Shown here: piece after piece, positions 20,113-63,455 of the stretch | Position numbering within the stretch: the first letter of the stretch is position 1 | How the letters are laid out: every line of letters starts with the position of its first letter | Assembly (NCBI RefSeq): GCF_006345805.1 | Contig: NC_043009.1 | Span: 12,028,001 to 12,092,000, forward strand | Length of the DNA stretch: 64,000 nucleotides | DNA from: Octopus sinensis | Taxonomy: Eukaryota | Direction: 5' to 3' | Translations under genes and position numbers: made by a program | The notes under the pieces: model-generated | Databases searched by the model: none | Told to the model about the DNA's origin: nothing | The model's input: the letters and a program-made list of their open reading frames with translations, nothing else

Positions 20113-22533
20113 GTATCCAATAAGTCCTCTTCCCCCTCTTTTTCTTGGTACAAACAGTCTGTCTGTGTCACTTTTTGGGTGGAGTGACCCATATCTAGTT
20201 AGTAACTTCCTTGTCTTTCTGTCTAAGCTGTTTAGTTCGTCTATTGTCCATGCGATTACCCCTGCTCCATATCGAAGGAGTGAAACCGCCCAGGTGTTGA
20301 CAGCTTCGATCTTATTACGTCCGTTTAATTTCGACTTAGGGATCAGTCTCAGTCTGCGCAAGTACTCAACCTTAAATTTTTCTGTCATTTCTTTCTCCAT
20401 CAATTTACCCATTTCCAATATCCCCAAATACTTATAGCCCGTCTCTTCTATCTCTTTCATAACCTCCCCTGACGGTATCGTTAGTCCGTCCATACATTTC
20501 AATACTAACACACCACACTTTCTCAATCCGAACTCCATTCTGATATCAACTGTATCAACGAGGGAGCTGACTTAGGTTTTATCTTTACCATAAAGTTTGA
20601 GGTCATCCATGAATAACAAATGGTTGACTTTGTTGGCGGCTTTTGAATACATAACCAGCTATTGCTTTCTTCAGAATCAGTGTCAGTGGTATTAAGCGCA
20701 GTACAAAGATCAGTGGGGATAGGCAGTCCCCTTGGAAGATGCTCCTCCTAATTTCTACTGTCCCTAAACTTCTTCCGTATGCTGTCAGGTCCGTCCTCCA
20801 ATTCGCCATACTTTTTCCAAGCAATCGCTCAACATTCGATGCAATCCCAAACAGGTTCATGCACACCATAATCCAAGAATGTGGGATCATATCGTACGCT
20901 TTACGATAGTCAATCCATGACATGGCTAAGTTACTTTTCCTCCTCTTGCAGTCTCTGAGTACAGTTTTATCTATCAGGAGTTGTGCACTAACGCTTGCAA
21001 CCCTTCTGCTCGTGTGGCAGGACTCCATTTTTTTCTAGATGTTCGTACATTGACTCTGCGAGTATTCCAGTCAATAACTTCCACATAAGTGGCAAACAGG
21101 TATCAGCCTGTAATTGTCTACCGTATTGCCTTTTTCGATGTTTTTTAGGCACAGCAATGTCAACCACTCTGGTGTTGCTTGGTCGGAATTTAACAAGGTG
21201 TTGAGTTGCGCAGGTATTCGTGCATGATATTTACCAAATCTTTTGATCCAGTAGCCTTGAACACTACCTGGTCCCGGGCCTTCCAGTTGCTCATTTTTTT
21301 GCTGAATTCCTTCACTTCCCTAACTGAAATGACTAGTTCTCTCTGTTTTGGACAGACTACTGTTTGTTTCAGGTCTTGCAACCATTCAGCATCCTTCTTA
21401 TGCTCCTTGTCTTTGCTCCAGAAGTCACTTCAAAACCTTTGACTTTTAATGTTATCTGGTATCAACTTTTCATCTGTACACCCCTATTCTGGTGGCAACC
21501 CTTCATTCTTTGGTTGTATCTCACCATCTTTGCTTTCTTTGAAACGAGGCGCTGCTTCTATTCCTCTACTACTACTTACAGGCCCTTTCTTTCAATATTA
21601 TATTTCCTTTTCAGAGCCCTGTATTTTTGTTCGCTTTTAAGCTCCCCTTTCTCTTTCCGGTCTAACACAGAGATTTCCTTCGAGAGCATGTCTAACCCTG
21701 CCTGGATTCTTCTTTTCCACCATGGATCTTTTATTTTGTCACTCCCATTGTGTTTCTTTTTCTTGACATCAACACCCACATTTTCTGCTACAACAATACT
21801 TGCTGCCTTGATCAAATTATTTGTTTCTATGATGTTTGTTCTGATGTATTTCAGAATTTCATTGACATTTTTCGTTTCTTGGTTCAATTTCCATCTATCA
21901 ACCTTTTTAAGGTTGCAAATAATGTTGCTATCATTCTCCTGTAGTCTTACCTTTATTCTGTCGTAGATGGCCTTTTGTTCATCTGTCATGTCGCTATTAG
22001 GTTTATCGTCTTCTTTTAGATCATCTATATGTCTCTCATCAAGTAAATTACCACTACTCCTTTCCTGTGCTATGAGATTACTCTTATTAGTGAGAACTGT
22101 ATTTTCGTTCTTATCTATGCTGCTTTTGTCCATGATCCATCTCTTGACAGCTTCGAGCTCTACTTCAGTAAATCAACAATTTTTCCTTATTGCTCTAGTG
22201 TGATCACATGGTCTATGTTTCGTGAGTTGAAAAAATCCCTTTTCTCTCCAATAAGCATACATACGTTGTCGGTAACCCCTAATTTGAGCACCATTTTCAT
22301 CTAACGGGTTGCTCAGGTATTAACACTCCATGACCACAGCATTAATTTGTTTGCTCCATCTACGTCGTGTGTGGTGGTCCACTCTTTCTGGATATCGACT
22401 GGCTGGAGCCGGGCCAGAATCTCTGAGCCTACCGGGTGTAACACTGTCACCATCATTGGCTTCAGTTTCACTGCCACCGTTATTCACAATATTTTGCTTT
22501 TTCATTGTCACTCATATGAGGTAGTGCTTACCT
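20113..22533 (-). mobile_element. R4/Dong-like non-LTR retrotransposon, 5' half (N-terminus and RT), decayed and 3'-truncated
   Basis: RRRWSKQINAVVMEC; NWKARD; WIDYRKAYDMIPHSW; IFQGDCLSPLIF; FMDDLKL; MEFGLRKC; GYKYLGILE; LHPKSDTDRLFVPRKRGGRGL. Preceded on the minus strand by (AAT)n(GAA)n. Confidence 0.92.
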
Positions 22534-29818: not shown

Positions 29819-29835
29819 CAGGGCATTGGTACTGC

Positions 29836-29958
<123 letters not shown>

Positions 29959-29977
29959 GTAATGATAATAATAATAA

Positions 29978-30725
29978 TGAAAGGATGTACTGAGGCATTG
30001 ATATGCAGTGCCCAGGAACAATCTCTGAGAACTAATTACACCAATTTCCAAATAGATAAAGAGCAGCGAATCGCCCTTTTGTAGGATGTGTGACAGCAAA
30101 AGTGAAAGAATCTCGTATATTGTTAGTGAGTGTAGCAAGCTGGACCAAAAGCACTTCAAAAGGAGGCACGGTAATGTGGATAAGTTTGTCCACTGGAAGC
30201 TATGTGAAAACTACGGCCTGGACAGAGCACGGAAATGGTACGAACATGAAGCAGAAGGAGTAACTGAGAACAATGAATATAAGATACTGTGGAATGTTGC
30301 AATCCGTTGTGACTCCCTAATCGATGCTCGGAGACCAGATGCTGTTGTGGTAGATAAAGGAAAAAAGGAAACCAAGATTATAGATATTGCAATACTTGGA
30401 GATGCAAGCATAAGTGACAAAGAACTAGAAAAGATTGAGAAGTACGGACTACTAAAAGACGAAATTGCAAGAATGTGGACTATGAGGAGAGTGTCTGTGA
30501 TTCCAGTAGTTGTAGGAACACTAACAAACAAGTTCGAGAAATATGTCAGAGAAATCGGAATTCACATGAGAGCAGAGCCAGCCCAAAAAACTGCACTGCT
30601 GGAGACAGTACTTGGATGCTGAATATCTCCCACAATAATTAACAGACAAGTATCAAAGCTTATAATGTACGGAAAGAGACCCTGAAAGACCTCTGACGCA
30701 GGCTGCTGTCCTCTCTCACAAAATC
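29978..30725 (+). mobile_element. R4/Dong-like 3' fragment: zinc knuckle, RLE and 3' UTR
   Basis: CRMCDSKSERISYIVSEC; RRHGNV; WKLC; ILWNVAIRCD; RRPDAVVVDK; IIDIAI; EKIEKYGLL; IPVVVG; QKTALL. Preceded by a long (AAT)n run, followed by an (AAC)n tail. Confidence 0.9.
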
Positions 30726-30734
30726 TACCAGAGC

Positions 30735-31292
30735 AACAACAACAAACGCTCTGATGCAGTACCAGGCCCTGGCATTCATGGCTTCTGACCTTAACTGATT
30801 GGAAGTGTTATCGTGTACATGTTTTGTCTTGGTATAAAACATGGGCTACAGCAAGTATTCTGCTCAATACCACAAATTTGCTTTCTATTGTTTGACCTTA
30901 ACCAGTTGAGCATGTCCCTTGGGGCCTGACAATATTTGCATCTCTGATCAAGAGCAGAAGAAGTGAGGAAGCAGCATGACCATGTGTTGAGAGGAATTCT
31001 TTGGGGTTTGAATAATTCACCTCTGGAAACATGCCTGTTTCGTTCATCATCTTTAAGCAAAGCTTATTCAGGTATGTTTTGAGTGGGAAGGACTACTCGA
31101 CCTGAAGAAAATTCAAACTGAGCCCCACCTGCAAGGCCATGTGCTGTTTATCTTGAAATAAGATCAACCTGTCACGCACATATGATTGTGGTGCATGTGC
31201 CTGGTGTGCCCTTATCGGATGGGTTGTCATGATAGGCTTACTGAGCTTCGTATATTTATACCCCAGTGTTACTTTGATGACATGCACTGCTC
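30735..31292 (+). mobile_element. (AAT)n-associated element, full diverged copy
   Basis: Inverted relative to 29253-29818; ends CTCTCTCACTC(AAC/AAT)n. Confidence 0.88.
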
Positions 31293-31308
31293 TCTCACTC
31301 AAAACAAT

Positions 31309-31357
<49 letters not shown>

Positions 31358-31399
31358 ATAATAATAATTCAATTGCAAATAGTAACGGAGAAAATGAGT

Positions 31400-32312
31400 C
31401 ACCTTGGAAGATTCCCCTTTTAATATTAACTTCTCCAAGGAATACATTGAGTACAATTTGGTTTTCCACTCAGACATGCTATGCATCAGAGAATTTGTGA
31501 TGTCAGCAACACCAAACATCTGCAGGCATCCAAGAATGAGGCATCATATCATATGCCTTCTTAAAGTCAATCCAAGCCATAAACATGTTTGTGTGATGTT
31601 TTTCACAATGCCTCAAAACTGTTTTATCGATGACCAGGTGATTCTTGGTATCCTGAGAACTCTTCCTACATCCTTGTTGTTCCCTTGGTAGTATTTCTTC
31701 CTGTTCCAGGAAAGTGTATGTCATTGCCGCACATATTCCAATTAGTATCTCCCAGATTATGCGTAGGCATGGTATGAGACGGTAGATTCCCACAATATTC
31801 CCCTTTCTTCTATCTTTCATTATAAGTGTTGTCCTCCCAGTCACCACCCACGCGGGGTCTGTACCTTTCTGGACACACTCATTCAATTGGGCTACTAGTC
31901 TTTCATGCAGCCAGAAACCATGAATCCCATCTGGTCCGGGGGCTTTCCAGTTAGGCACTTTACCCACTTGTTCTTTCACATCACCCGTGCTTATGACAAT
32001 ATTCCTTTGTTTCTTTCCTCCCTGTAATTCTGTCTTGATAGTTCCTATCCACATTGCATCCCTTTTATGCAGAACTCCTTGGCTTGATTTGCATCAGGCG
32101 CATCATTTTCCCCATCGTCTCCTTCTAACGTTCGGAAGAATTGCTTCGGGTTATTTTTAAACAATCCGTTCTCTTCGAACTGCTTATTTCTGTTCAGAAA
32201 TCTTCTGGCTTTTTGCTAAGATCCTCTGTTTTAACTGCTCTATTACTGCATCAGACCCGTTCTTCCGTATTTTACATTTCTTCCCTCGGTCGTTCTTTTT
32301 CTCATTTTTCCA
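31400..32312 (-). mobile_element. R4/Dong-like RT N-terminal fragment
   Basis: VPNWKAPGPDGIHGFW; TGRTTLIMKD; YRLIPCL; EQQGCRK; WIDFKKAYDMMPHSW; RGIFQGDS. Confidence 0.9.
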
Positions 32313-33614
32313 GTTAAATCCACTTAACATCATCTACATTCGTTATTAAAGTAGAAGGAACACTTATGGGACCACTCGACTTGTTAGAAATACCAGCTCA
32401 ATTTCTCTGAAAATGCTCAAAATACTTCCAAAGACACATCGGATAACATAATTCTAGACTATGTTATGTAAACAAAAAATACTGCTTTCAAATTTTTCAC
32501 ACAAAGCCAGCAATTTCAGGGAGGGGATAAGTCGATTACATCGACCCAGGTACTCAACTGGTACTTATTCTTATTTCTTTATTGCTCACAAGGGGCTAAG
32601 CACAGAGAGGACAAACAAGGACAAACAAAGGGATTAAGTCGATTACATCGACCCCAGTGCGTAACTGGTACTTATTTAATCGACCCCGAAAGGATGAAAG
32701 GCAAAGTCGACCTCGGCGGAATTTGAACTCAGAACATAACGGCAGACGAAATACCTATTCCTTTACTACCCACAAGGGGCTAAACACAGGGAGGACAAAC
32801 AAGGACAGACATAGGGATTAAGTCGATTATATCGACCCCAGTGCGTAACTGGTACTTATTTAATCGACCCCGAAAGGATGAAAGACAAAGTTGACCTCGG
32901 CGGGATTTGAACTCAGAACGTAGCGGCAGACGAAATGCGGCTACGCATTTCGCCTGGCGTGCTAACGTTTCTGCCAGCTCGCCGCCTTATTCTATCGTTC
33001 TCGGTGGAGTTTGAACTGCGCACGTGAAGACGGATGAAAAACCTCTAAGCATTTCGCCCGACGTGTTAACGATTCTGCCAGCTCGCCGCCCAATATGAAC
33101 GAAAAATATTGAGAAGAAGACCAAATAAATGGTAAAGAAAAGAAAAAACGCAAGTTGGTACGATTCGACTAAGGTTAGTGCCGGCCGCGACTACTAATGA
33201 TGGCTTGCGTTGGCCCTGTACTTTAATTTATCGATTAGTCAAGAGGGAAAAGCAACGTCCACAACATTACTACTGCCTCCGGATCTGATTAACAAGAAGA
33301 AAGGTTCCCCGAAGAGGGAGATCTGACCTGAATGCATGCACCAAGCGGATCCCGTAAAGAACATCCAAGAACATTTGGTGGTGCTGTACTAGGCAACAGA
33401 TTAACTCTACTTCCCAGATACTTTATATCTAAAGGCGGCTTGTTTAGCCCCTTGTGGGTTGTAAAGAAATATGTATTTCGTCTGCCATTACGTTCTGAGT
33501 TCAGATTCCGCCGAGGTCAACTTTGCCTTTCATCCTCTCGGGGTTGATTAAATAAGTACCAGTTACACACTGGGGTCGATGTAATCGACTTAATCCGTTT
33601 GACTGTCCTTGTTT
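32313..33614. repeat. Segmental duplicate, copy 1 (unique DNA plus nested SINE A copies)
   Basis: Collinear with 36353-37437 from GTTAAATCCACTTAACATC to GACTGTCCTTGTTT; copy 1 carries one extra SINE unit. Confidence 0.92.
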
Positions 33615-34740
33615 TGGAGCTGGATGACATTCTACACAGAGAAAAGAAAGTCAAGGTCAGCGAGGCGCATCAAAAAATGGTGAAGATGGTGTTGAAATCT
33701 AGTCTGAATGCCAAAAATCTGATAACAGCAATGAATATCTGGGCAGTTGTGGTGGTCAGATATAGTGCGTCCGTCCTCAAATGGACTAAGGAGGAAATAT
33801 CAACACTTGTTAGGAGGACGAGAAAGTTGATGACGCTGCAAGGAGCGCTACACCCTAAAGCCAACGTAAACAGAATGTATATGAAAAGAAAGAATGGTAG
33901 CAGAGGACTAATTAGTATAGACCATTGTATAAGAAGTGAAAGGAGAACGCTTGCTGAGTATTTGATAGATAGTGATGAAGACCTGTTGCAATATGCCGCG
34001 AACGATATGGGTGAAATTATGGGCAAGGAAGAGTTTAACCAAAGAGCTGAGGGGAAGAGAAAAGAAGACCTTCTTGAAATGAGAATGCATGAAGAGTGTA
34101 AAAGGAATACACTGGACGTTAAGGACAATACAGCATCGTGGGCATGGCTTGAGCGAGGTGATTTGAAGCATACCACCGAAAGCCTGATCACTGCTTCACA
34201 GGACCAGGTTCTCGCTACCAATTCAGTGAGGTATAGCATCTATAAAACTTCTGACACCCAGAAATGCAGACTCTATGAAAAGAGTGTGGGGAAAATGTGA
34301 CCCACTTGGTAAGTGGATGTGAGAGCCTTGCACAAAAAGAAAATAGCGCCGCCACGATAAAGTGTGTGTGTATTTTCAATGGCTCTTATGCCGGAAATAC
34401 GAATATGAAGTAACAGAGAACTGGTATGAGCATGTATGGAAAAGTAACGATACTCTGGGACTATGATTTTCAGACAGATCGTGTAATCGAACACCAGGAT
34501 ATTTTCATATTGAATAAGGGAGACAAATACTGTCAGATCATTCATGTAGCCATACTAAATGACATGAATGTTGTGAGTAAAGAGGTTGAAAATTTCACCA
34601 AGTACTCCGGATTGAAAGTGGAACAGGCAAGACTGTGTGGAATGCGAGAGGGTAATGTAAAAGGGATACCAGTGGTGATCTGAGCGTTGGGCTAAATCCC
34701 ATTGAAACTTCAAGACTTCTTAAGGCAACTGGAAATCATA
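33615..34740 (+). mobile_element. R4/Dong-like fragment: RT thumb, zinc knuckle and RLE, decayed
   Basis: VLKSSLNAKNLITAMNIWAV; LHPKANVNRMYMKRKNGSRGL; ESLITASQDQVLAT; KCRL; ILWDYDFQTDRVIEH; IPVVI. Confidence 0.9.
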
Positions 34741-41584: not shown

Positions 41585-41767
41585 TTGGGTTGGCAAGAAA
41601 GTAATTTCAGTTTTTTAGTGTAAAATAAAAGTTTTTTTTCTCATACGTAGGAGTGGCTGTGTGGTAAGTAGCTTGCTTACCAACCACATGGTTCCGGATT
41701 CAGTCCCACTGCGTGGCACCTTGCGCAAGTGTTTTCAACTAGAGCCTCGGTCCGACCAAAGCCCGTC

Positions 41768-41808
<41 letters not shown>

Positions 41809-42870
41809 TGTGTGTGTGTGTGTGCGTGTGTGTGTGTGTGGTGTGTGTGTGTGTATATTTTGTTGTCTGTGTTTGTCCCCCAACATCACTTGACAAACCG
41901 ATGCTGGTGTGTTTACATCCCCGTACTTAGCGGTTCGGCAAAAGAGACCGATAGAATAAGTACTAGGCTTACAAAGAATAAGTCCTGGGGTCGATTTGCT
42001 CGACTAAAGGCGGTGCTCCAGCATGGCCCCAGTCAAATGACTGAAACAAGTAAAGAGTATACAAAGAATGAACTTTAATCAATTCCATATTTTCCAGTTT
42101 GCTCGATGATCTTTTGCCATCTTTCTGGCAACTTCATGATTCTGCGCACATCGAACGTCTGGTCCTTACCAGCCCAAAACTGAAGCAAGTGCGAATTCAG
42201 GTCATCATCATTATGGAAAGCTTTACCATTCAAAGAATTTTGAAAACTTCGAAATAAATCGTAATCTGATGGTGCAAGGTCAGGGCTACATGGTGGATGT
42301 AACATCACTTCCCAACCAAGGTCCAATAATTTTTCACGAGCTAGACGTGTGTGGTCTAGCGTTGTCATGGTGGAACATGATTCCTTTACGATTTGCCAGT
42401 TCTGACCATTTTTCTTTGATTGCTTCCTCCACTTTCATTAGTTGTTGACAGTAAACATCTGAATCGATCGTTTGGTTCCTTGGAAGCAGCTCAAAATACA
42501 CACCAAGTTAACAGCATGTCCTTTTTTTGATGCAATTCAGCTTTCGATGTCATTTGTGCTGGTTCATTACGCTTGGGCCATGATCGTTTTCGATTAATGC
42601 TATTGCAGACAATCCATTTTTCATCACAATTGATGATTCGTTTCAAGAAAAGGTTGATTTCATTGCGCTTGAGATGCATATCGCAAACCTTAATTCGTTG
42701 TGTTAAGTGAATCTCTTTCAGTTTATATAGAACCCAAATATCGAGCTTCTTAACGAGTCCAAGACATTTTAAGTGATTTTCAATTGTTGTGTGTGATACA
42801 TTTAACCTCTCTACAATCGCTTGCACAGTCATATGACAATCAGATTCAATTATGGCTTTGATTATTGAAC
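41585..42870 (-). mobile_element. Mariner (DD34D-type), 5'-truncated, with nested SINE B
   Basis: TA plus TIR TTGGGTTGGCAAGAAAGTAATTTCAG at 41583-41612; WVLYKL; IINCDEKW; HHDNARPH; HPPCSPDLAPSDYDLF; LPERWQKIIEQTGKY. Confidence 0.9.
41647..42057 (+). mobile_element. SINE family B nested in the mariner 3' end
   Basis: Head, internal TA/TG tract and tail. Confidence 0.9.
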
Positions 42871-42922
<52 letters not shown>

Positions 42923-42945
42923 TAATAATCATAATAATAATAATG

Positions 42946-42976
<31 letters not shown>

Positions 42977-44560: not shown

Positions 44561-45232
44561 GCGCCAATTGTATGTATATACTATATATATATCGTTTCAC
44601 ATCATTGTTACATAGCCCTTTCTTCCACTCTGTGTCACATCATTCTTGCTTTCCCTTTTCGTCGCTCTCTCTCTCTCTCTCTCCCTCTCTCTTAATCTCC
44701 GTTTGGTCTTCATGCTTTAAAAACAAAGCAGCACTACTTATCCCATTTCTTTCTTCCCCGCCTCCACCACCCTCATTCATCTTCCGATGTTTGACCTCTC
44801 TTTCATTACACACATACACACCACAGACACATACACACCACAGACAGGTGGATCACTTTCACACCGGTTCATGTGAACTGTTTGTTGATCTTTCGCTGAA
44901 CGATGACAAGAAAAACGACTGGCAACATTCAAGGCCTCACTCAAGCTGCTTCGTCAAATGGCTTCGTGCATTTGCAATTCAGTTGCCTCTTAATTGCTTG
45001 GAGTAGAAATTAATCGCTTGTTTACTAATCACTGCTCTAATACAGGAATCCCTTGCATTACAGAAGCAATGCAAAAATGTGAAAGATGTCGTCGTAACGC
45101 GAAATTCCGTAATGTGAAATTGCCTTTCTTATTGATTTTAATATAATAAGATCATAATGCATTTCGATGGAATTTTTCATAAGGCAACAAAAGACAAGTA
45201 ATAATAATAATTTGTAAAAATATACATTACAA

Positions 45233-45584
45233 CTAGCATTATGACCCGGCAGCGCCGGGTCATAGTGCTAGTGCATGCATATACAGCTGCGTGCGTGCGC
45301 ACATAGACGCGAGTACTGTCCAAATCTCCGACCAATCACATACAGCTAGCTGGCATTCAACTGGCGTATCAAGTTTCGGGCATTTTGATTGGGTTTTGGA
45401 TAGAAAATGCACAAAAAAGACACTTCTATTGATTTTTAATGGCTTTGCGGGATAACTGGGGAAATGTAAAGATGTGCACGACCACCCTTGGACGGTTTTG
45501 AATGACCATAGAAAGTGCAAAACTGTGGATTTGTATAAAGGATACACACACACACAGACATTTTGCCGTTTATATATAGAGAGA
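45233..45584 (-). mobile_element. Non-autonomous Helitron-like element, copy 1
   Basis: A|TC start and CTAG|T end on the minus strand, terminal hairpin; second copy at 57258-57630. Confidence 0.85.
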
Positions 45585-45689
45585 TATGTATACATGAAAA
45601 TATATAAAATCTACACTTTGGAGAAATGGTGGAATGAGAGTTACTGGAGTGAGATGAGGGACATTATCTTCTATTTCATAGTTCATCAC

Positions 45690-46490
45690 CTGTTTGAGGA
45701 GTGAAGGGGCATCTATTTCATTGTATAGCTCAGTGTAGGAACTGAGATCATCCTAAACTCCTCTGGTAATTTTTATGGTTTTGTAGCCATTATCAAGAAA
45801 AAGATGCAGATCTCTCTCTATAAGTGTCAGCCAGTGAACAATTTAAGAGACGTTTGTAGAATTTCCGTATTCTTATCTGTTTTCTCAGTTTTGCTTTTAT
45901 TCTAACAGCATCAGCTTCTCTTTGGAAAATTTGCGACTCCATTGCATCACCCGCTTTGATTTACTCAGACTTCATATCATTTTCAAGAATTCTATCTTCC
46001 TTGAATTGAAGGCTTTCTGCTTTTGGAACACTTGTAAAGTCACGGATAAGGCTCTTCCTCATCCATACTTTCTTATTTGAGTTACAAATAAGAGGATTTT
46101 CGGAGTGATACGTGAGTAGGGACTTTAGTTTCATAACACCAGTGGCGTTTTCTCACAAGAGTACTGTCAGATAATTTTGGGAAGCTTTGATTTTTCGTTT
46201 CGAGAAATAAGTGTTCCAGCCGTTAGGCGTTTCCAGAAAATGCCTTACGGTTCCATCGACATTGTATACATGCTCTGGTGCGCAGCCTTCTCCAGCCATC
46301 GTTTTCTTCAGCTGCTCAGAATAATATGTTGCTGTCTTTCATGCTTTGGTAATATAGGTGTTATTTTTTTCTTCCACAGAAAAATCTATTAAAACATCAT
46401 GTTTAATACTGATGGCCCCTTTTTGCACTACTTCTTTCAGTTCCACATGATGGTTTCTCTCCAGACATCTTGAACTCTGGGTGAATCCAG
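45690..46490 (-). mobile_element. pogo/Tigger-like transposase remnant
   Basis: Decayed FKMSGE; EGCAPEHVYNVDGT; FWKRL; LTVLL; MKLKSLLTYHSENP; NKKVWM; LFLDNG, resembling the DDE_1 pattern EQVFNADETGL-WKR...LLVYHSENP...NKKAWM...LDNA. Confidence 0.7.
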
Positions 46491-47264
46491 CAGCAGCAGT
46501 GGCGATCAGCAGTTATCAGTACCAAATATTTAATAAAAACAACAGCACACGAAAAGAACTGTTTGTGAGAGCAAAAATTGTTTTCTTATCCGTATGAATG
46601 TAAGATAGAAATGGGAGCAAGAAAGGGGTGAAGGGGTTAGGCAGGAGGAAATACTCTGTGATTTCAGGTTGATGGGTACTTCGCCCTTCTGCTTCTAACT
46701 TAAGACATAAACACTTCATACTCTAACCACACATACACACACACAAAACACACGAACACTCAAAACACATACACATATGCTGTGTTGACATAAAATATAT
46801 GTAGCTACAGGCACTGCTATCATGCTAATACTATTATTGCTGATGCCAGTTGTTTAAAATTTAGTGCGTTAGTATTGGTGAGGGTGTTACTCGTTTTAGT
46901 TTTAGCGTGGATGATTATAGTGATGATGGAAAGTATTGTCGGAGGTGAGATGTTGATTTTGTTCAATGTATTATTGTTAGTGTTTAATCTCGACTCAATT
47001 CTTACAGACCCATTAAACTTTTAAAATACAGTAAATCATAGCATTACCATACGTAAGTGTATTTATTTGAGACGTATCTGCTTATCTTGTGCCTATTGTT
47101 GTTGATGTTGTTAGTCATTAAAAAATTAATGGGTTGGTACTGGTGGTGATTTTATTACTCTTTGGTTTAACTGTTGATGGTGGTTATGATAGTGCTGATG
47201 ATAGAAAAATGGGAGATAGTATACATCAGACATATACATACATACATATATACATACATATATT

Positions 47265-47314
<50 letters not shown>

Positions 47315-47467
47315 TAGATATACACACACACACACAAGATAAACAAAACACATTCACACATATATGTACCTGTGTCAATTTGTGCTAGTGTATAAGCACA
47401 TACGTATATGACTATGCATCATATACATAACAAACACACACACGCGCATATATATATATATATATAT

Positions 47468-47855
47468 ATTCAACAATAATATTAAGGAATGGCCTTAATC
47501 AGCAGTTTATATTTGCTGCTGATAAGTTGGCGCGATGACGGTAGATCTTGAAAATTTAGAGTATATATTCCCAAGGCATCGATGCTGTTGCCTCGTGGAA
47601 TATTTATTCCTCCTGGCTTCCTTGCCGATGAGACGGGCCAGTGGTAAATTGACTCGATTAAATTAAATTAATTTAATTAGGCTGGTTTACCAAAAAGTAC
47701 GTCGAAACTATGCATAGTCCAAAGATGATTAGGGTAAATGTTTTTTAATTTTCCTTTGATTTCTGAATTACTACTATTTAGCGGTTTGAGTTTAGCTGCT
47801 CGTTTTAGTGAGTTGAATGGCCTATTAAGGCCATTCCTTAATATTATTGTTGAAT
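47468..47855 (+). mobile_element. 388 bp cassette with perfect 32 bp inverted ends, containing a hammerhead motif
   Basis: ATTCAACAATAATATTAAGGAATGGCCTTAAT at 47468-47499 and its exact reverse complement at 47824-47855; starts at the end of a (TA)n run. Confidence 0.85.
47617..47727 (+). ncRNA. Type I hammerhead ribozyme motif (one core change, U4 to C)
   Basis: CTTCCTTG-CCGATGA-GACG...CGTC-GAAA-CTATGCATAG-TC-CAAAGATG; predicted GUC cleavage after 47719. Confidence 0.7.
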
Positions 47856-47954
47856 GTACATTATATAGTCTGTTGACTATTTTTTCTTTCTCCCTAGACC
47901 GGTGGTGGCGAAAAAATTTCTATTGAATTTTTTGCTACCCTTATATTGATTAAT

Positions 47955-48005
<51 letters not shown>

Positions 48006-48453
48006 AGCTAAAAGATGGAAGTGATAGTATTATATTATTCCTTCATTACGAACATTTAAATCAGTGATTCTCAAACATTTTTTATCCATGGACTCCTTTC
48101 ATTATTAATTCATTATTATGGGCCCACTTAGCTATTTAATGCTTAAAAGCTAGTTTTATAGAAACTTCTTTCAAAATTCCTATTTTGCTTCCCACATGTT
48201 AACTGCAGGCAGAACTATGTAAAATGTTAGAGAAAAAAAACCTAGCTGTTATTTGCAATACACACCAATACATACAACTAACGCAAATCTTTTTTTCTGG
48301 GGCCGTTAAATACTATTGTGGATCCCAAATTTAATATTTTGTTACGGGGACAACCCAAAATCTTATACGGACCTTCAAGGGCCATATGGAACCTATTTGA
48401 GAGCCACCGGGTGCATGGTGCATGGTTCAGACATATGAATATACACGATTGTA

Positions 48454-49301
48454 GATACAACATATTACGTGGGAGTTCCTCTTGTAATGTTGAAACGATC
48501 GTAATGAAAGGAAAAGTATAATAGCATCATCTCCTTTCTAGAACTTAACTGCATAGGATTCCATGACTAATAATTTATCCCTGGAATTTCACTTTGTATT
48601 GGTCGATTTCTGCTAGAGAAAATAGTTCAGATGTATGCATTGGTTGTTGGTACATGTAGGAGTGTTCGCTGAGGAAATTACTTGAATTTTGTAAATATTT
48701 GGGGTCAAAATTCACTCCAGAGAATTATTTTCTGCAGAATTATTTCCGGTATTTTTGGCGCGCCAAAACGAAGACTTTTGAAATATAACCCCAAATGTAA
48801 TTGGTAGAACTATATGCATCTTCAATCTCATGTGGACGTCCCGTGTATAGTTCTGCAAATTATATTTTGCTATGACGGTCACACTGATGAATTGCGGACA
48901 TTTACCTAAGTATTACGTAAATGGTAACAATGAAACTGGTTTTGTGACTAATCATTATATTTTGTATCTTTTCATTTGTCTTGCTCGCTTACGTTCTGGC
49001 GTTTGTTGAATTTTCCTGAGAACAATCTTTTCTTAGTGGTCACACCATATGGGGTCTACATCTAACATAATGATACAACATATAACATGGGAGTTCCTCT
49101 TGTAATGTTGAAACGATCGTAATGAAAGGATAAGTATAATAGCATCATCTCCATTCTAGAACTTAACTGCATAGGATTCCATGACTAATAAATTATTCCT
49201 GGAATTTCATTTTGTAGAGGAAATAGTTCACATGTATGCATTGTTTGTTGATACATGTAGGTGTGTTCGCTGATGAAATTGCCTGAATTTTCTAAATATT
49301 T
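48454..49301. repeat. ~240 bp direct repeat pair (48454-48700, 49072-49301), period ~618 bp
   Basis: Shared GGGAGTTCCTCTTGTAATGTTGAAACGATCGTAATGAAAGG...GAATTTT.TAAATATT; copy 2 has a small internal deletion. Confidence 0.92.
48878..48948 (+). ncRNA. Minimal type I hammerhead motif
   Basis: GTCACA-CTGATGA-ATTG...CAAT-GAAA-C-TG-GTT(T)-TGTGAC; 6 bp stem I, intact core, one extra nucleotide at the cleavage site. Confidence 0.65.
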
Positions 49302-49310
49302 TCTATTCAG

Positions 49311-49358
<48 letters not shown>

Positions 49359-49375
49359 AAATAAGCAACAAGGTA

Positions 49376-49464
49376 ATGCAGTACGATCGTTTCATGCAAC
49401 TCCATTTTATTGAACAATGCAATCATTACATCAATTTAAAATGTAGAGCAATCTTCAGCTGCAC
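49376..49464 (-). ncRNA. Type I hammerhead ribozyme motif, intact core
   Basis: GTGCAG-CTGAAGA-TTGC...GCAT-GAAA-CGATCG-TA-CTGCAT; predicted GUA cleavage between 49382 and 49381; U.U at the stem II closing pair. Confidence 0.75.
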
Positions 49465-49469
49465 AAAGA

Positions 49470-52070
49470 CAGAATTTAATTAAATTAGAACAGATGGACA
49501 CATTAGAATAATTATACCTAAAATCTCCAAGAAGTTAAGGAGATAGACAAAGAACATTCTCTACTTCAGCATAGAAGTTACTAAGATTATCAAGAAGACT
49601 CTGTCTGCCACTGATATTTTGTCTTATGGGGTCAGTTTTAATTTATAGACTAGTTTATCAAATCCCTTGTATATCTAAGGCTGAGAGAACAGAGGGCAGT
49701 ATCTGTTAGAGGTAGGGCTGAGGCAATAGACAGAGATTCTAGTTGGTATAGTCATAAAAAAATCAAGATTTATTATAAGCAATATCATGAGGTTTAGTAA
49801 GGGAAAACTTAAAACAAGATATTAGCTGATAATTAAGGAGGTTGCCCACTAGCAGACTATTGATAATGAAACAGGGCAAGTCTTTTCATATGGTACTATA
49901 GTTAAATATTTTGAGCAATATTGCTATGTATACAGTTAAAGTTTAGGGTTATTCAAAGGATTATTAAGAAGAATATTATAACAAAAGGATAGAAATTTAT
50001 GAATACTTTTGAGTATATATCAAACTTCTTACCACAATAATGGCAGTGCATCAGCATGGCCACAGCTCTGAGCTGAAACTAGAGAGAACAAAAAATAGAA
50101 GGAGGAAAAGAAATTATCCAGAAATAGTTTACATATTGTGTACTTAATTACTAACTCATCAGATGGTGTCTGTGAATATTGATTAATTGGTATATACTGT
50201 TATTAATAAAGGAGTATTGGAGTAAAGCAACATGCTAATTATATGATAATAAAATTTTAATCTAATCAATATTTTTCTATAAGTAGTGAATATCCCAGTA
50301 TAGTTTTATATAAGCTAAGTATGAATTTATTGAGGTACAAAAATTATATTAATTTATAAATAAATAAAGGCTGATTATAAAACAATAAAGAAATAAAATA
50401 AAATAATCAAGTAGGGCAGAACACCATAGAAAAGGAAATAAAATGGCTTAATTACTAATACTATGGTAAAGTATTTGTAGCTTGTTAACACCAATAGAGA
50501 AGATTTTTTAGAAAAAGTATGATAATTCAAAATATATTAAACTAAAAATTATATATTTACTTATTTAGCTAATATCAGTAAAAGACTGATGTTTGGTATC
50601 GGCTAAAGGAATATTTAAGTTATGGAACAATCATATTTTTACACTAATCTTTTTTTAAAATTAAGAGTTGTATTATAGGTTTAAGAAGTTATTATTGTTA
50701 CTCCCTACATGTCATTTATAGTTTCTTAGTGGTACTTGTTTTGAAGAGTTATTTGTATAAAGGCCCTTATAAATACTAAGATCAGGAGGGTAGAGCCATT
50801 TAAGAAAGAGATAAATCAAGTAATTTCTAGCAATCATTTCAAGTTACATTGTCTTATTGTATAAAGTTAAAATGTAGGGTAATCAAGAAGATTATTAAGA
50901 ATGAAATTTTAAGAAAAGGATAAAACTTCTTTGAATATTTTGAGTATATACCAAACTTTTACCACAACAGAGGGAGGAAAAGAAAATTGCATAGAAATAG
51001 TTTTATATTTATTTACTTATTACTTATCTAAATATTAACTTATTATATGGTTTCTATGGAGATTGATCAAATGGAGTTAAATGGTATTTAATAAGGGAGC
51101 AACTGAGGTTAAAGAACATGTCAACTATATACTGATTTAATTAAATTGAACTATTTTAAGTTGTACAGATAGCGGTATTGCCTTATATAACTGAGTACGA
51201 ATTAATAGGGGTACAAGGATCAGATTTATTTAAGGCTACTATAAAATAACAATAATAACAACAACAAAAAGGATCAGTTAGGATAGAGCATCATGGGAAA
51301 AAGAATAAAAACAGCTTAATCACTAAAAACCATAATAAAATAGCTATACCTTATTGACTCTAATAGCAAGTATTCATAGAAAATGTATAATAATTTATAA
51401 GCTAAAAATTGTTAATTAACATATTTAGCTTATTATGATCAGGACCAAAACCGAGTATTGGTTGAGAGAATAATTGTTGTTAAAAGGACATGCTAATCAT
51501 ATACTAATATTAAATTAAGAGGTATAATATAGATTTCAAAAGTTGTGTTAATCCATAAATGATATTACAGTTACTTAGAAGGGCTGTTTGTATAAAGCCA
51601 ATATAAATACCAAAATTAAGAGTATGGAACACTTTAAGAAAGGGGTAGAAAAACTTAGTTATTAAAACTATTTTAAACAATATGTCATTATTATATAAAG
51701 TTAAAATTTAGGGTTATCAGGAAGATTTATCATTGAGGTGAGACAAAAAATTTACTATAAATTAGTTAAATTTTAATTTAGGCAGTTTACTTTTAGCAGT
51801 TTAATTTTAAATTGTGAAGATACCTCTATTATTATTTATAAGCTAAATATGGATTTATAGGGGTACAAAAATTTAGGTTTTTCTAAAGGTAATTATGAAG
51901 TATTAAAATTATCGGGTAGGGTAGAAACACCATGGGAAAGGATATAAAAGCTTAATCACTGAAATCATGATGAAGTATATATACAACTTAGTAACTTCAA
52001 TAGAGAAGATTTATAGAAAATATGTAATAATTCAAGTATTTAAAATTAAAAATTGTTTATATATATTTAT
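49470..52070. repeat. AT-rich diverged tandem array, 3-4 units of ~0.64-0.93 kb, origin unknown
   Basis: Recurring anchors at 49713/50412/51279/51917 and 49935/50866/51700; essentially microsatellite-free; no ORF in the supplied track. Confidence 0.85.
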
Positions 52071-53456
52071 CAGGCATGGGTATATGGTAAGAGGATAGCT
52101 TTGCAATCATATGGTCCCTGGTTAACTCCTACTGCGTGGCCCCTTCGCCAAGTGTCTTCTGGTACATCCTCGGGCCAGTCAGTATATATATATACTTCAC
52201 CTTCAAAACGCAGAGTAGATGAAACCATGGCGACTGAAGAAGGGGAATTTTCCTTGTGTTATTTGTCCTGTACTCTATTTATTTTGTTATTTAAGAAAAA
52301 TGTCCAGTTCCTTGGGTTTGTGTCTATGTTTTCGTTTCTCATTGTGTTCGATGTTTTTTGGTGTCCTGTACCCACATATGCATGTATATATACATATAGA
52401 TGTAGGTACGTACATATATGTATGTATATATGCATATGTTTTATTTATTAATTTGTTATATATATATACATAAAATGTAAGTTTTAACTGCTATTTCTAA
52501 ATTTCAGTATGTGGTAAAGCAAATTTTTGCTTAACCCTAATTATAACTATACTCATAATTATAAAATTTTATATATAAGTTTACCGATAATGGTTCTTTT
52601 AACAAACCGAACTACTTGCTAAAATTATTAATTATTAATTAATTAATTTGACCTTTATTATTATGGATATATATATGCGATGGGCAAATTATAACCATTT
52701 TATGTTTTTAATTTCGCCCATGTCCATTGTTTGTTTTAGATTTTGTTGACTGGACGCATAGTATGGTAGGATCAGTTGGGCACCCTCTGTGAGAACAACA
52801 GCAACATGACGCAATTCACTCTGTCAGAAATTTGGAAACGACTTGCTGTACTGCTTGGCATGTGGGTCAGAAGCTAGAATATGAACATTTCAGAGTATTT
52901 GGGTGTCACCACACCCTGTGTATATATAATTATATATATGTGTGTGTGTCTTTGTGTCTGCATTTGTCCTCCTCAACCGCTTGATAACCGGTGTTGGTGC
53001 ATTTACGTCCCCGTGAGACTGATAGAATATACACCAGGCTTTAAAATGTTCTGGGTTCAATTCATTCGACTAGATCTTCAAGGCTGTGAAACAAATAAAA
53101 GATAAAATATATAGATTATATAGGCACAAAATAACGTCTTTTACTCTTTCTCCCTCTCTCCCTCTCTCTCTCTCCTTCTCTATACAAACATACAAACATG
53201 ATGTAGTTCTTGCACAAATGCTGGCCAGATGGTGATTTCGATTCGCAGATCGGCTGTGCATTGCATTCTTAAGCAAGACACTCTTTTCCACTTTGCTTCA
53301 GTTCATGCAGATGCAAATGGGTATCACTGCAGTGGTCTGGCGCTCCGTTGAGATGGACTGTTTGCCTGCGGTGTGGGAGCATTCGAAAGTTAAGACGTTA
53401 AGACAATGCGAGGAGCCGCACCAGCAGTACACATATCCGATAATCGATATCATGAT

Positions 53457-53504
<48 letters not shown>

Positions 53505-53510
<6 letters not shown>

Positions 53511-53665
53511 GTCTGGGGAGAGTCATTTTCTTTTTGTACCTTAAAGGTTGCAAAATGCAACGAAAATTTTTAAGAAAATAAAAATAACAAATAAGTGGAA
53601 ATTTTACCGGTGAGTGTGTTACATTATATGGCACAAAAAGAAAATGACTCTCCTCAGACACAACA
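53505..53665. repeat. 36 bp inverted repeat pair starting at a (TA)n run
   Basis: 53505-53540 versus 53630-53665, 34/36 matched. Confidence 0.88.
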
Positions 53666-53818
53666 GAATACAATATACGTATTATGAAACTATTCCGTAT
53701 ATTACTTGAATCTGAAGTTTTCAAGTGAAATAATTGAGTTCCAATGAAACCAAATATACTTTTGTCAACAATAATTCTAGATAATTCCTAGCTACTTTTA
53801 TCCTGGGCAAAGCCGATA

Positions 53819-53884
<66 letters not shown>

Positions 53885-53894
53885 ACACACATCT

Positions 53895-54610
53895 GGTCGT
53901 GCGGAAGTAGGTAGAAATGTCCATAGGTTGACAGTGAACAGTTGTGAAATCTTGCATGCATTAATTACAGCTTTTATTATTAATTATTTCTTTCCAGGTA
54001 AACTGATATCTCACTGTTCAAAAAATTTTTTAAAAGAGACACCAACAGTAACTAGTTACGATTTCTCTTGAAAATGGGCAAAGTTTGGCATTGGGTGTAA
54101 TCAAGTGGAAAAAAAGGTTTTAGCCCCCAACAACATTCATGCCGACATGGTTTCTCTATTAGGGGATGATGCTTCAGTTTTGTAAGCAGTGCAAAAGTGG
54201 GCAGACAGCTGAATATGTGAGGGGAAGAGAGAGTCTTGAAGATGATCCAATCTCTGGTCTGCCATTATCGAGGAAAACATTGATCGTCTTCGCCATACGG
54301 TGATGGATGAACAGGCGATTGACTATAAATCAAAATGAGAGAGTTGAGAGTATTCTGCACAATGGACTTGACATGACGAAAGTTCCTGATCGAATGGGTG
54401 CTACGTCTTCTGACACCTGATCAAAAGTGCACCAGGCTGACCATATCACTGGAAAATCTGAGATTGCTTCAGGCAGATCTTGCTGGTTTCTTGAACGTTA
54501 CCTAACCCAGGATGAGTGTTGGGTTCAATCACTTTGAGCCAGAGACAAAGAGACAATCCATGCAGCGGAAACACCCCACTTCACTTTGCACAAAAGACTC
54601 CAAGGGAGAC
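53895..54610 (+). mobile_element. Mariner 5' half, decayed
   Basis: NIHADMVSLLGDDA; RESLEDDP; EENIDR; WV-RLLTPDQK; FLERYLTQDECWV; HFEPETKRQSMQ. Confidence 0.85.
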
Positions 54611-54757
54611 CATGTCGAAAACTAATCCTTATTTGGCCACATTTCATGAAAGGATCCTAGTCAGCCTATGAACTTCTCAGCCGACCCGCGTTTGTATGTA
54701 TGTATGTATGTATGTATGTATACATACATACATACATACATGCATACATACGTATAT

Positions 54758-55148
54758 GCGCAGGAGTGGCTGTGTGGTAAGTAGCTTGCTTACCAACCAC
54801 ATGGTTCCGGGTTCATTCCCACTGCGTGGCATCTTGTGCAAGTGTCTTCTACTGAAGCCTCGGGCGACCAAAGCCTTTTGAGTGGATTTGGTAGATGGAA
54901 ACTGGAAGAAGCCCGTCGTATATATGTATATATAAATATATGTGTTTGTGTGTGTGCTGTTGTTGTTTTTCCGCCCACCATTGCTTGACAACCGATGGTG
55001 GTGTGTATACGTCCCCGTAACTTAGCGGTTCAGCAAAAGAGAAGGATAGAATAAGTACTAGGCTTACAAAGAATAAGTCCTGGGGTCGATTTGCTGGACT
55101 AAAGGCGATGCTATAGCATCATGGCCACAGTCAAATGACTGAAACTAG
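54758..55148 (+). mobile_element. SINE family B, full copy
   Basis: Head to tail. Confidence 0.9.
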
Positions 55149-55172
55149 TATATATATATAATAATATATATA

Positions 55173-56949: not shown

Positions 56950-57257
56950 CTCATACACAAGCACACACATGTATATACTACACACACACATACACATTCA
57001 CGTTTGCTCACACTCGTTCTCTTTCTCTTTCTCCTTAACTCCCTCTTCTCTATCTTTCTCTGGTTCATTCTCCATCTCTCCTTTCATGACCCTTCTCAGT
57101 AACCAAACTGCAAGAACAGCATACAGAGCGCACCCTGCATTATCAGGGGCCCCGCATTAAGTGTTTTATTACGGCAATATTCTTTCGCCTTCAGCATGTT
57201 TGAATGTTGATTCAATAGTTGGAATACTTTTTGAGGTTCAAAGCATTTTATATTAAA

Positions 57258-57630
57258 CTAGCAGTATGACCCGGCGTTGCCGGGTCATAGTGCTAGTGCA
57301 TGCATATACAGCTGTGTGCGTGCGCACATACACGCGATTACTGTCCAAATCTCCGACCAATCACATACAGCTAGCTGGCATTCAATTGGCGTATCAAGCT
57401 TCGGGCATTTTGATTGGGTTTTGGATAGAAAATTCACAAAATGTCACCTCTATTGATTTTTTAATGGCTTTGCAGGGTGACTGGGGAAATGTAAAGATGT
57501 GCACGACGACCCTTGGACGGTTTTGAATGACCACAGAAAGTGCGAGCCCTTTAACTGAAAAATTGTGGATTTGTATAAAGGATACACACACACACACGCA
57601 CAGACATTTTGCCGTTTATATATATAGAGA
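57258..57630 (-). mobile_element. Non-autonomous Helitron-like element, copy 2
   Basis: A|TC...CTAG|T termini; homologous to 45233-45584. Confidence 0.85.
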
Positions 57631-57874
57631 TGCTTCTAAGCTATAAATTCCGAGTTAGTGATTTTGAATTTTCTCAATTTCTACGTAGCACTATACTGCT
57701 GTTGACTTTTATGAAGATCTGGGTGTCCAAGGTTGTTCCAATTTTTGGAATGCTTCTGAGATCCAATATATTTTCAATTAAACAAATTTCAGTGTTCAAG
57801 TAAGACGGTAACGAGAGCTGGGTAGATTTACTTCATTTTTGCTAGATGAAATTAAATTACTAACATACAGTCCC

Positions 57875-58861
57875 ATAGTAGCACCTTGGGCAAGTGTCTT
57901 CTACTGTGGCTTCGGGCCGACCAAAGCCTTGTAAGTGGATTTGGTAAACGGAAACTGAAAGATCGTCGTATACATACAATATGTGTGTGTGTGTTTGTCT
58001 TCCACCATCATTTGATTGCCGGTGTTGGTGTGTTTACCTCCATGTAACTTAGCGGTTGTGAAAAAAACAACGATGAGATAAGTACTAGGCTTATAAAAGG
58101 AAGTACTGGGGTCAAGTCATTCATCTAAAAATTCTTCAAGGCAGTGCCCCAGCATGGCCGCAGCCTAATGACTGAAACAAGTAAAAGATAAAAGAAAATA
58201 ACGATTCTAATTAACAGCCTTGCGATTATTAAAGCAACAATGAGTTCAAATCCTTCGAAGGTTGATATTGCTTTCCATCGTTTCGAGGTCGAAGAACCAG
58301 GTCTGGGGTTGATGTAATTGACTTATCCCAACCCCTTAAAAATTATTGTCGTTTTCAAAAATTAGAAAGAATTATTAAGGAGATAATCTGGCAGAATCGT
58401 TAGCACACCGGGCAAAATGCTTCGCGACATTTTGTCCGTCTTTACATTCTGAGTTCAAATTCCGCCGAGCTTGATTTTACCTCCAACCATTTTGAGGTCG
58501 ATGAAATAAATACCAGTTGAGCTCTGGGGTTGATAAAATCGAGTTACCCCCCCTTCTCTGAATTGGTTGTCTTTTGCCAAAATTGGAAATGTTATAATGA
58601 TTACATAATGTCAAGTCAGTGTTAGTGATTTCATTAATGATGGTTTCAAAAGTCTTTTACTCTTTTACTTGTTTCAGTCATTTGACTGTGGCCATGCTGG
58701 AGCAGCGCCTTTAGTCGAGCAAATCGACCCCAGGACTTATTCTTTGTAAGCCTTGTACTTAATCTATCGGATCTCTTTTGTCGAACCGCTAAGTTACGGA
58801 GACGTAAACACACCAACATCGGTTGTCAAGCGATGTTGGGGGAACAAACACAGACACACAA

Positions 58862-58911
<50 letters not shown>

Positions 58912-59085
58912 GCATTTATACGACGGGCTTCTTTCAGTTTCCGCCTACCAAATCCATTCACAAGGCTTTGGTCGGCCCGAAGCTGTAGTAGAAGACACTT
59001 GCCGAAGGTGCCACGCAGTGGGGCTGAACCCGAACCATGTGGTTGGTAAGCAAGCTACTTACCACACAGCCACTCCTACGCCTAT
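57875..59085. mobile_element. SINE cluster: B (plus, 57875-58195), two degraded A (58200-58600), B (minus, 58655-59085)
   Basis: Family-diagnostic motifs. Confidence 0.85.
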
Positions 59086-62760: not shown

Positions 62761-63023
62761 ATCTTTATAGCTTACTTGTTAACTATTTAACCAATTAACT
62801 AATCGATTGCTTGATTAATCAATCGTCTGATAAATTAATCAGTCCGCTACTTTCGTCAGAGCATTTCCGTCGCCATTCGTGACCTCATCAAATGACATGC
62901 CCTCTTCATCCCAGGTCATTGTTTAGGTCAAGACTGGAGACGAAAGTACTCTGACGAATTAGTTAATAGGATAAAGGATTAACTAGTTGACTGTCAATAA
63001 AATCTTTGAAAAGAAGTGAAATA

Positions 63024-63455
63024 GGCGCAGGAGTGGCTGTGTGGTAAGTAGCTTTCTTACCAACCACATGGTTCCGGGGTCAGTCCCACTGCGTGGCATC
63101 TTGGGCAAGTGTCTTCTGCTATAGCCCCGGGCCGACCAATGCCTTGTGAGTGGATTTGGCAGACGGAAACTGAAAGAAGCCTGTCGTATATATGTATATA
63201 TATATATATGTATGTGTGTGTGTTTGTGTGTCTGTCTTTGTCTCCCTAGCATTGCTTGACAACCGATGCTGGTGTGTTTACGTCCCCGTCACTTAGCGGT
63301 TCTGCAAAAGAGACCGATAGAATAAGTACTGGGCTTACAAAAGAATAAGTCCCGGGTTCGATTTGCTCGACTAAAGGCGGTGCTCCAGCATGGCCGCAGT
63401 CAAATGACTGAAACAAGTAAAGAGTAAAGAGTAAAAGAGTAAAAGAGTAAAGAGT
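63024..63455 (+). mobile_element. SINE family B, full copy with extended (GTAAAAGA)n tail
   Basis: Head to tail. Confidence 0.92.

What the first reader, a model, noticed from the sequence alone, without database searches (positions are those of the whole stretch)
49470..52070. Unexplained 2.6 kb A/G-skewed array of diverged units
Seen: longest stretch with no ORF, almost no microsatellite and no known repeat apart from a ~60 bp SINE tail at ~50040-50097; 3-4 units with anchor spacings 699/867/638 and 931/834 bp; plus strand A-rich with G above C. Composition differs from the flanks. Could be an old satellite, a decayed tandem gene, or foreign DNA.
Basis: partly seen in the sequence, partly recalled or inferred. 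Interest (0 to 1): 0.7.

Follow-up and report, generated by a model that had tools for sequence, protein, structure and literature searches.

The report
Old decayed three-copy tandem duplication
The region is the decayed, non-coding remnant of an ~850-bp AT-rich segment duplicated head to tail about 2.4 times, later hit by SINE insertions and a deletion; it is ordinary repeat-rich animal DNA with no sign of a gene or of foreign origin.

Summary
The repeat is real but smaller than reported. Unit homology runs only from about 49904 to 52070 (2.17 kb). Unit A is 931 bp, unit B 834 bp, and unit C is a 378-bp partial copy. The units are 68-72% identical (local-alignment z = 25-74 against shuffles). 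The left part of the finding, 49470-49903, does not align to the units but shares their composition. GC of the array is 25%, the lowest in the window, and purines make up 57% of the + strand.

The "SINE tail" is confirmed: 59 bp in unit A only (50027-50085) match the 3' end of the window's abundant ~420-bp SINE. The array ends exactly at another SINE head (52071).

No coding or RNA signal was found:
- 76-87 stops per 940 codons in every frame, and no credible Pfam hit.
- No codon periodicity in the differences between units.
- No Rfam hit, RNA folding no better than shuffles, and no unusually conserved blocks.

There are no matches in phage, plasmid, viral, metagenome or prokaryote collections. 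None of these holds the host genome, so I could not test whether the unit belongs to a dispersed host repeat family.

The best reading is an old local tandem duplication decaying neutrally. It is older than the SINE copies (K2P 0.35-0.43 against 0.15). Interest is low.

The parts
49311..49356 (.). (TA)23 microsatellite at the left edge of the AT-rich, purine-skewed block
   Evidence: TRF: period 2, 23 copies
49357..49422 (+). Single arm of a foldback MITE-like element. The full two-armed copy lies at 16559-16700. It is not part of the repeat unit.
   Evidence: Alignment to 16559-16635. The 17-mer GTACGATCGTTTCATGC is found only here and in the two arms at 16.6 kb.
49423..49903 (+). Non-repeated, purine-rich, AT-rich segment. 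It belongs to the finding but is not alignable to the units.
   Evidence: z 0.4 and -1.2 for 49423-49903 against the unit tails; the wider stretch 49380-49926 gave z 0.1-1.6 against whole units. GC 0.331, purine 0.565. No other copy in the window.
49904..50857 (+). Unit A: 23 bp of the preceding unit's tail plus a full 931-bp unit starting at 49927
   Evidence: left limit of homology
50027..50085 (+). 59-bp, 5'-truncated 3' tail of the window's ~420-bp SINE family. It is present in unit A and absent at the collinear site in unit B.
   Evidence: Alignments to the SINE tails at 63371-63436, 55099-55148 and 13895-13959; BLAST hits to SINE tails; gap in unit B in alignment A1
50858..51691 (+). Unit B, 834 bp, the most compact full unit
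   Evidence: 67.8% identical to A over 853 aligned columns, K2P 0.43
51692..52070 (+). Unit C, partial. The first ~36 bp of the unit are followed by a ~250-bp internal deletion, then roughly unit positions 290-570/640. It contains a local 14-bp mini-repeat at 51772-51809.
   Evidence: 72% identical to A and 70% to B; BLAST 51732-52069 vs 50216-50567; TRF
52071..52176 (+). 5' head of a SINE copy that ends the array. No continuation of the unit is found to its right.
   Evidence: Matches SINE heads at 13513, 54761, 63028, 59077(-) and 15859(-). Unit tails against 52177-54700 give z <= 0.2.

Best explanation
An AT-rich, non-coding stretch of about 830-870 bp was duplicated head to tail at this locus to give three adjacent copies. 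This probably happened in one episode, by unequal exchange or replication slippage, and the array has since decayed neutrally. Three later events are visible. A 59-bp, 5'-truncated SINE tail was retroposed into copy A. About 250 bp were deleted from copy C. A SINE now lies at the right end, and whatever followed unit position ~570-640 of copy C has been lost. The purine excess on the + strand (A>T, G>C) was already a property of the ancestral sequence. It is shared by all three copies and by the unduplicated 480 bp to the left. The array has no detectable function.

Shown: the tandem structure, its bounds, the divergence, the SINE pieces, and the absence of coding or RNA signals. Inferred: the duplication mechanism, the single episode, neutrality, and local origin.

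The confidence of 0.62 is for local origin. That the block is a decayed, non-coding tandem repeat of some origin I hold at about 0.9.
For: - Tandem homology is far above chance (z 74, 29 and 25; E 6e-87).
- All three pairwise distances are similar (K2P 0.43, 0.35, 0.40), as expected from one amplification episode.
- No other copy of the unit lies in the 64-kb window. Two degenerate unit patterns hit exactly the three units and nothing else. Sensitive BLAST finds only the SINE tail and (AAT)n/TA low-complexity matches outside the block.
- The units are about 2.5-3 times more diverged than the SINE copies are from each other (median K2P 0.15).
- No coding signal: 76-87 stops per 940 codons. The only Pfam hit has E 0.048 and 14 bits against a cutoff of 26. 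Mismatches show no 3-base periodicity.
- No RNA signal: Rfam gives nothing beyond the (TA)n stretch at E = 1. RNA folding z is -0.16 and -0.12.
- Conservation along the unit is homogeneous. The longest identical run is 16 against 15.2 expected, and the window variance has p = 0.12.
- At 68-72% identity between copies, an assembly artefact can be ruled out.
Against: - Local origin is not proven. No host genome or host repeat library could be searched, so a dispersed family with ~850-bp units cannot be excluded.
- The control scan shows that the metagenome collection holds no DNA carrying this host's SINE. The protein collection barely knows the window's own retroelement (2 hits at 38-44%). External negatives therefore say nothing about host repeats.
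- The purine skew has the same sign as the sense strands of the retroelement fragments in the window (purine 0.60-0.635). That would also fit an origin from a retroelement's untranslated part.
- There is a marginal internal half-unit similarity in unit B (z 3.7).
- The right end of the array is missing, so the original copy number is unknown.
Confidence: 0.62

Rival explanations
1. The block is a fragment of a dispersed host repeat family. This could be a large-unit (~0.85 kb) AT-rich satellite, or the internally repeated untranslated part of a transposable element, for example a non-LTR or Penelope-like retroelement lying in + orientation.
For: The purine skew extends beyond the array into 49423-49903 and has the same sign as the sense strands of the RT-bearing fragments in the window. 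The block is sharply bounded in composition. According to PMC13282606, octopus genomes are about 66% repeats, with many unknown families; this applies only if the host really is an octopod.
Against: There is no second copy in 64 kb. No reverse-transcriptase or other Pfam signal appears in the three + strand frames of the 3.8 kb upstream. No tblastn similarity to the window's retroelement ORFs appears anywhere in 44-57 kb. GC of 25% is far below that of the RT-bearing fragments (41-43%). Copies at 68-72% identity show no homogenisation, unlike a maintained satellite.
Confidence: 0.28
2. A decayed tandem array of protein-coding or RNA genes.
For: The tandem arrangement with a unit length typical of a small gene.
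Against: Stops occur about every 11-12 codons in all six frames. There is no Pfam family above threshold and no 3-base periodicity of differences between units. No Rfam family and no tRNA were found. Folding is no better than shuffles. No block is conserved beyond expectation.
Confidence: 0.03
3. Foreign DNA: a viral, bacterial or organellar (mitochondrial) insertion.
For: Composition differs from both flanks, with the lowest GC in the window.
Against: There are no blastn matches to phage or plasmid records. The unit patterns have no matches in viral, metagenome or prokaryote contigs. No protein-coding remnant exists, which a mitochondrial or viral piece of 2.6 kb would normally carry. The block predates the host SINE copies and carries one of their tails. 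Comparison with the host mitochondrial genome could not be run.
Confidence: 0.03

Closest known systems
Low-copy tandem (segmental) duplications and macrosatellite-like repeats in animal intergenic DNA (general knowledge)
   Same: Head-to-tail copies of a unit several hundred bp long, non-coding, decaying by substitutions and indels, and interrupted by later retroposon insertions.
   Different: There are only 2.4 copies, and they are strongly diverged (68-72%). Macrosatellites proper have many copies that are usually kept similar to each other.
Satellite-like arrays carried inside mobile elements in molluscs, such as the Helentron/MITE-borne arrays described in oysters (recalled from the literature, not tested here)
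   Same: Short tandem arrays embedded in repeat-rich, AT-rich mollusc DNA next to MITE-like sequence. One arm of a foldback MITE lies at 49357-49422.
   Different: As I recall them, those units are about 150-200 bp, and the arrays are flanked by recognisable element ends and occur at many loci. Here the unit is ~850 bp, no element ends were found, and no second locus is known.
The window's own ~420-bp SINE family. It resembles the abundant SINE of octopus genomes; that is from memory, and the host was not verified by any tool.
   Same: 59 bp inside unit A match the SINE 3' tail, and the array abuts a SINE head.
   Different: The repeat unit itself has no similarity to the SINE body. The SINE pieces are secondary insertions.

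Membership tests
Tandem duplication / tandem repeat | Adjacent head-to-tail copies with significant similarity and no spacer | tested here: met
   Units A, B and C are contiguous; z 74/29/25; alignment A1
Satellite DNA | Long array of many copies | tested here: not met
   2.4 copies in 2.17 kb. No continuation is found left of 49904 or right of 52070.
Satellite DNA | Neighbouring copies kept similar (homogenisation) | tested here: not met
   68-72% identity, K2P 0.35-0.43
Satellite DNA or dispersed repeat family | Further copies or arrays elsewhere in the same genome | not testable with these tools
   None in the 64-kb window. No host genome is in any collection, as the SINE control scan showed.
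Protein-coding gene array | Open reading frames, family similarity, and codon-periodic substitutions | tested here: not met
Structured RNA gene array | Match to an RNA family, or folding better than shuffles | tested here: not met
Non-LTR retroelement untranslated region | Purine-rich sense strand | tested here: met
   Purine 0.56-0.58 in the block against 0.60-0.635 in the RT-bearing fragments, with the same sign. This is weak and non-specific.
Non-LTR retroelement untranslated region | Contiguity with reverse-transcriptase or endonuclease coding sequence on the same strand | tested here: not met
   No Pfam family above its cutoff in the + frames of 45600-49380. No tblastn hit with E below 0.6 in 44-57 kb.
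SINE (the window's ~420-bp family) | Similarity to the SINE head, body and tail | tested here: not met
   Only 50027-50085 (tail) and 52071-52176 (head, outside the array) match. The unit body does not.

The most novel reading that the evidence does not exclude
The ~850-bp unit, together with the purine-rich 480 bp to its left, belongs to an uncatalogued host repeat family. This would be either a large-unit AT-rich satellite or the internally repeated untranslated region of an undescribed retroelement of this probably cephalopod genome, and this locus would be one old, eroded copy.
Probability: 0.25. Interest if true: 0.2.

Novelty: new member of a known kind. Interest (0 to 1): 0.08.

Why it matters
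It matters little. Old low-copy tandem duplications are a routine component of repeat-rich animal genomes. The useful outcomes are corrected bounds (49904-52070), a relative order of events at the locus (duplication first, SINE activity afterwards), and the exclusion of gene, RNA and foreign-DNA readings. If the unit proved to be a dispersed family, it would be one more entry in a host repeat library.

Tried and rejected
- Extending the array leftwards to 49470 or 49380: no similarity.
- Continuation of the unit beyond the SINE on the right (52177-54700): none.
- The unit as a dimer of ~400-bp sub-repeats: marginal in B (z 3.7), absent in A and in the cross comparisons. Not accepted.
- Apparent external matches at 29830-29978 and 42839-42957: these are (AAT)n microsatellites aligning to an A-rich stretch of the unit.
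- Decayed gene: six-frame Pfam scan, periodicity test.
- Structured RNA: Rfam at gathering and at E <= 1, folding of unit B on both strands.
- Foreign DNA: viral, metagenome and prokaryote pattern scans, blastn against phages and plasmids.
- Retroelement coding sequence next to the block: Pfam on the upstream + frames, tblastn with the window's retroelement ORFs.
- Identifying the host:
  - Exact look-ups of four window ORFs found nothing on record.
  - A protein search with an ORF from the 30086-34300 retroelement fragment (no Pfam family) gave only two distant hits from an unnamed ENA assembly.
  - A full-text search for an 18-mer of the SINE found nothing.
  - A tRNA-like head of the SINE was not detected by ARAGORN or Rfam.
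  The octopod attribution therefore rests on my memory of the SINE and is unverified.
- I ran no further search on the array's short ORFs. One search showed that the collection lacks this host, so a negative result would mean nothing.

Full report
**Setting.** The window is eukaryotic, repeat-rich DNA.
- It carries many copies of a ~420-bp SINE-like family: 54744-55150, 63021-63434, 13513-13943, 58666-59085(-), 41643-42064 and others.
- It also carries fragments of reverse-transcriptase-bearing retroelements at 19960-22133(-) and 30086-34300, and abundant TA/TG microsatellites.
- From memory, the SINE looks like the abundant SINE of octopus genomes. No tool could verify the host: exact ORF look-ups failed, a protein search gave two distant unnamed hits, and a literature string search gave nothing. 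I treat "octopod cephalopod" as a lead only.

- Gapped BLAST aligns 49927-50893 to 50858-51727 (E 6e-87), and 51732-52069 to 50216-50567 (E 6e-35).
- Local-alignment scores lie 74, 29 and 25 standard deviations above shuffles for A/B, C/A and C/B.
- MAFFT gives 67.8% (A/B), 72.3% (A/C) and 69.8% (B/C) identity, with K2P 0.43, 0.35 and 0.40.
- TRF misses the array because its period exceeds 500 bp.

The array is shorter than the finding. Homology begins near 49904 and ends at 52070.
- Unit A is 49927-50857 (931 bp), preceded by 23 bp of unit tail.
- Unit B is 50858-51691 (834 bp).
- Unit C is 51692-52070 (378 bp).

That makes 2.4 units, not 3-4. The stretch 49470-49903 has no similarity to the units (z 0.1-1.6), and the 699-bp spacing was not reproduced.

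**Anatomy of the block**, from left to right:
- (TA)23 at 49311-49356.
- One arm of a foldback MITE at 49357-49422; its complete copy is at 16559-16700.
- A unique purine-rich segment at 49423-49903.
- Units A, B and C.
- A SINE head at 52071-52176.

Unit A has 59 extra bases (50027-50085) that are absent at the collinear site of unit B. They align at about 80% identity to the 3' tails of three SINE copies.

Unit C lacks about 250 bp (roughly unit positions 36-290) and contains a 14-bp mini-repeat at 51772-51809. Nothing to the right of the SINE head resembles the missing unit tail, so the original right end of the array is lost.

**Composition.**
- The array is A 41.3, T 33.8, G 15.6, C 9.3%.
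- Its GC of 25.0% is the lowest of all 2.1-kb spans in the window.
- Its purine fraction of 0.569 is in the top 7%.
- Each unit on its own shows the skew, and so does the unrepeated 49423-49903 (purine 0.565). Both flanks do not (0.484 and 0.465).

The skew therefore belonged to the ancestral sequence and to a slightly larger block (49423-52070) than the array. Its sign equals that of the sense strands of the retroelement fragments in the window (0.60-0.635). I take this as a weak hint of possible retroelement ancestry and nothing more.

**What it is not.**
- Not coding. There are 76-87 stops per 940 codons in every frame and the longest open stretch is 65 codons. Six-frame Pfam gives only an E 0.048 hit far below its cutoff. 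Differences between A and B show no 3-base periodicity.
- Not a known or structured RNA. There are no Rfam hits at gathering thresholds and only the (TA)n stretch at E = 1. There are no tRNAs. Unit B folds no better than shuffles on either strand (z -0.16 and -0.12).
- Not under visible constraint. The longest identical run between A and B is 16 against 15.2 expected, and the variance of identity along the unit is unremarkable (p = 0.12).
- Not demonstrably foreign. Two degenerate patterns that hit all three units and nothing else in the window find nothing in viral contigs, metagenome contigs or prokaryote genomes. blastn against phages and plasmids finds nothing.
- Not attached to retroelement coding sequence. 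The three + strand frames of the 3.8 kb upstream hold no Pfam family above its cutoff. tblastn with the window's retroelement ORFs finds nothing in 44-57 kb.
- Not an assembly artefact, since the copies differ at about 30% of sites.

**Limits of the negatives.** A control scan with a 19-mer of the SINE found only three chance 19-20-nt matches in the metagenome collection. The protein collection knows almost nothing related to the window's retroelement fragment. None of the collections therefore contains this host. The key question of whether the unit is unique to this locus or belongs to a dispersed host family remains open. Within the 64-kb window there is no other copy. The apparent hits at 29.8 and 42.8 kb are (AAT)n microsatellites.

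**Most likely history.**
1. An ~830-870-bp stretch of AT-rich, purine-skewed, non-coding DNA was tandemly duplicated to three or more copies. This happened in roughly one episode, because all pairwise distances are similar. Unequal exchange or replication slippage is the inferred mechanism.
2. The copies diverged neutrally to K2P 0.35-0.43. That is about 2.5-3 times the median pairwise distance of the SINE copies in the window (0.15), so the duplication predates the bulk of SINE activity seen here.
3. A SINE tail entered unit A, about 250 bp were lost from unit C, and the right end was replaced or truncated at a SINE head.

If the host is an octopus, the published scale can be applied: Jukes-Cantor 0.09 is about 25 My and 0.2 about 56 My to consensus (PMC13282606). 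A per-lineage distance of about 0.18-0.22 would then put the duplication at very roughly 50-60 My. This rests on an unverified host and assumes neutrality.

**Comparison with known kinds.**
- It behaves like an ordinary old tandem (segmental) duplication.
- It fails two defining features of satellite DNA, namely many copies and homogenised copies.
- It fails the tests for a gene array, an RNA array and a SINE.
- It meets only the weakest feature of a retroelement UTR, the strand skew.

I file it as a new, unremarkable member of a known kind.

**Verdict.** The feature is real and its bounds are corrected. It has an ordinary explanation and low interest (0.08). The most novel reading still open is that it is an eroded copy of an uncatalogued large-unit repeat or retroelement UTR family. 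I give that a probability of about 0.25, and it would be of modest interest even if true.

Noticed in passing
window 47466-47856: A ~390-bp element with terminal inverted repeats of about 30 bp, lying in TA-rich microsatellite. It looks like a MITE-type DNA transposon.
   Followed up: no
window 48454-48700 and 49072-49301: A 247-bp direct duplicate, 87% identical, 618 bp apart, immediately left of the block. It is either a second, younger local duplication or two copies of a short repeat.
   Followed up: partly
window 16559-16700 and 49357-49422: A foldback (hairpin) MITE-like element with two complementary arms at 16.6 kb. A single arm of the same family sits next to (TA)23 at the left edge of the block. 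Both copies follow TA-rich microsatellite.
   Followed up: partly
window 52071-53110: A SINE head (52071-52176) and a diverged SINE 3' half (52919-53110) are separated by about 720 bp of unrelated DNA. This is either one SINE split by an insertion or two truncated copies.
   Followed up: no
window 53486-53682: A ~200-bp imperfect palindrome (71% self-complementary) directly after a (TA)n run.
   Followed up: no
window 45223-45585 and 57249-57631: A 360-380-bp direct repeat, 88% identical, 12 kb apart. The family is unknown.
   Followed up: no
window 19960-22133 (-) and 30086-34300: Fragments of reverse-transcriptase-bearing retroelements, with RVT_1 hits in the ORFs at 20603-21028(-) and 31503-32054(-). 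Their sense strands are strongly purine-rich (0.60-0.635). The large protein collection holds only two distant relatives of the 33599-34300 ORF, which itself has no Pfam family.
   Followed up: partly
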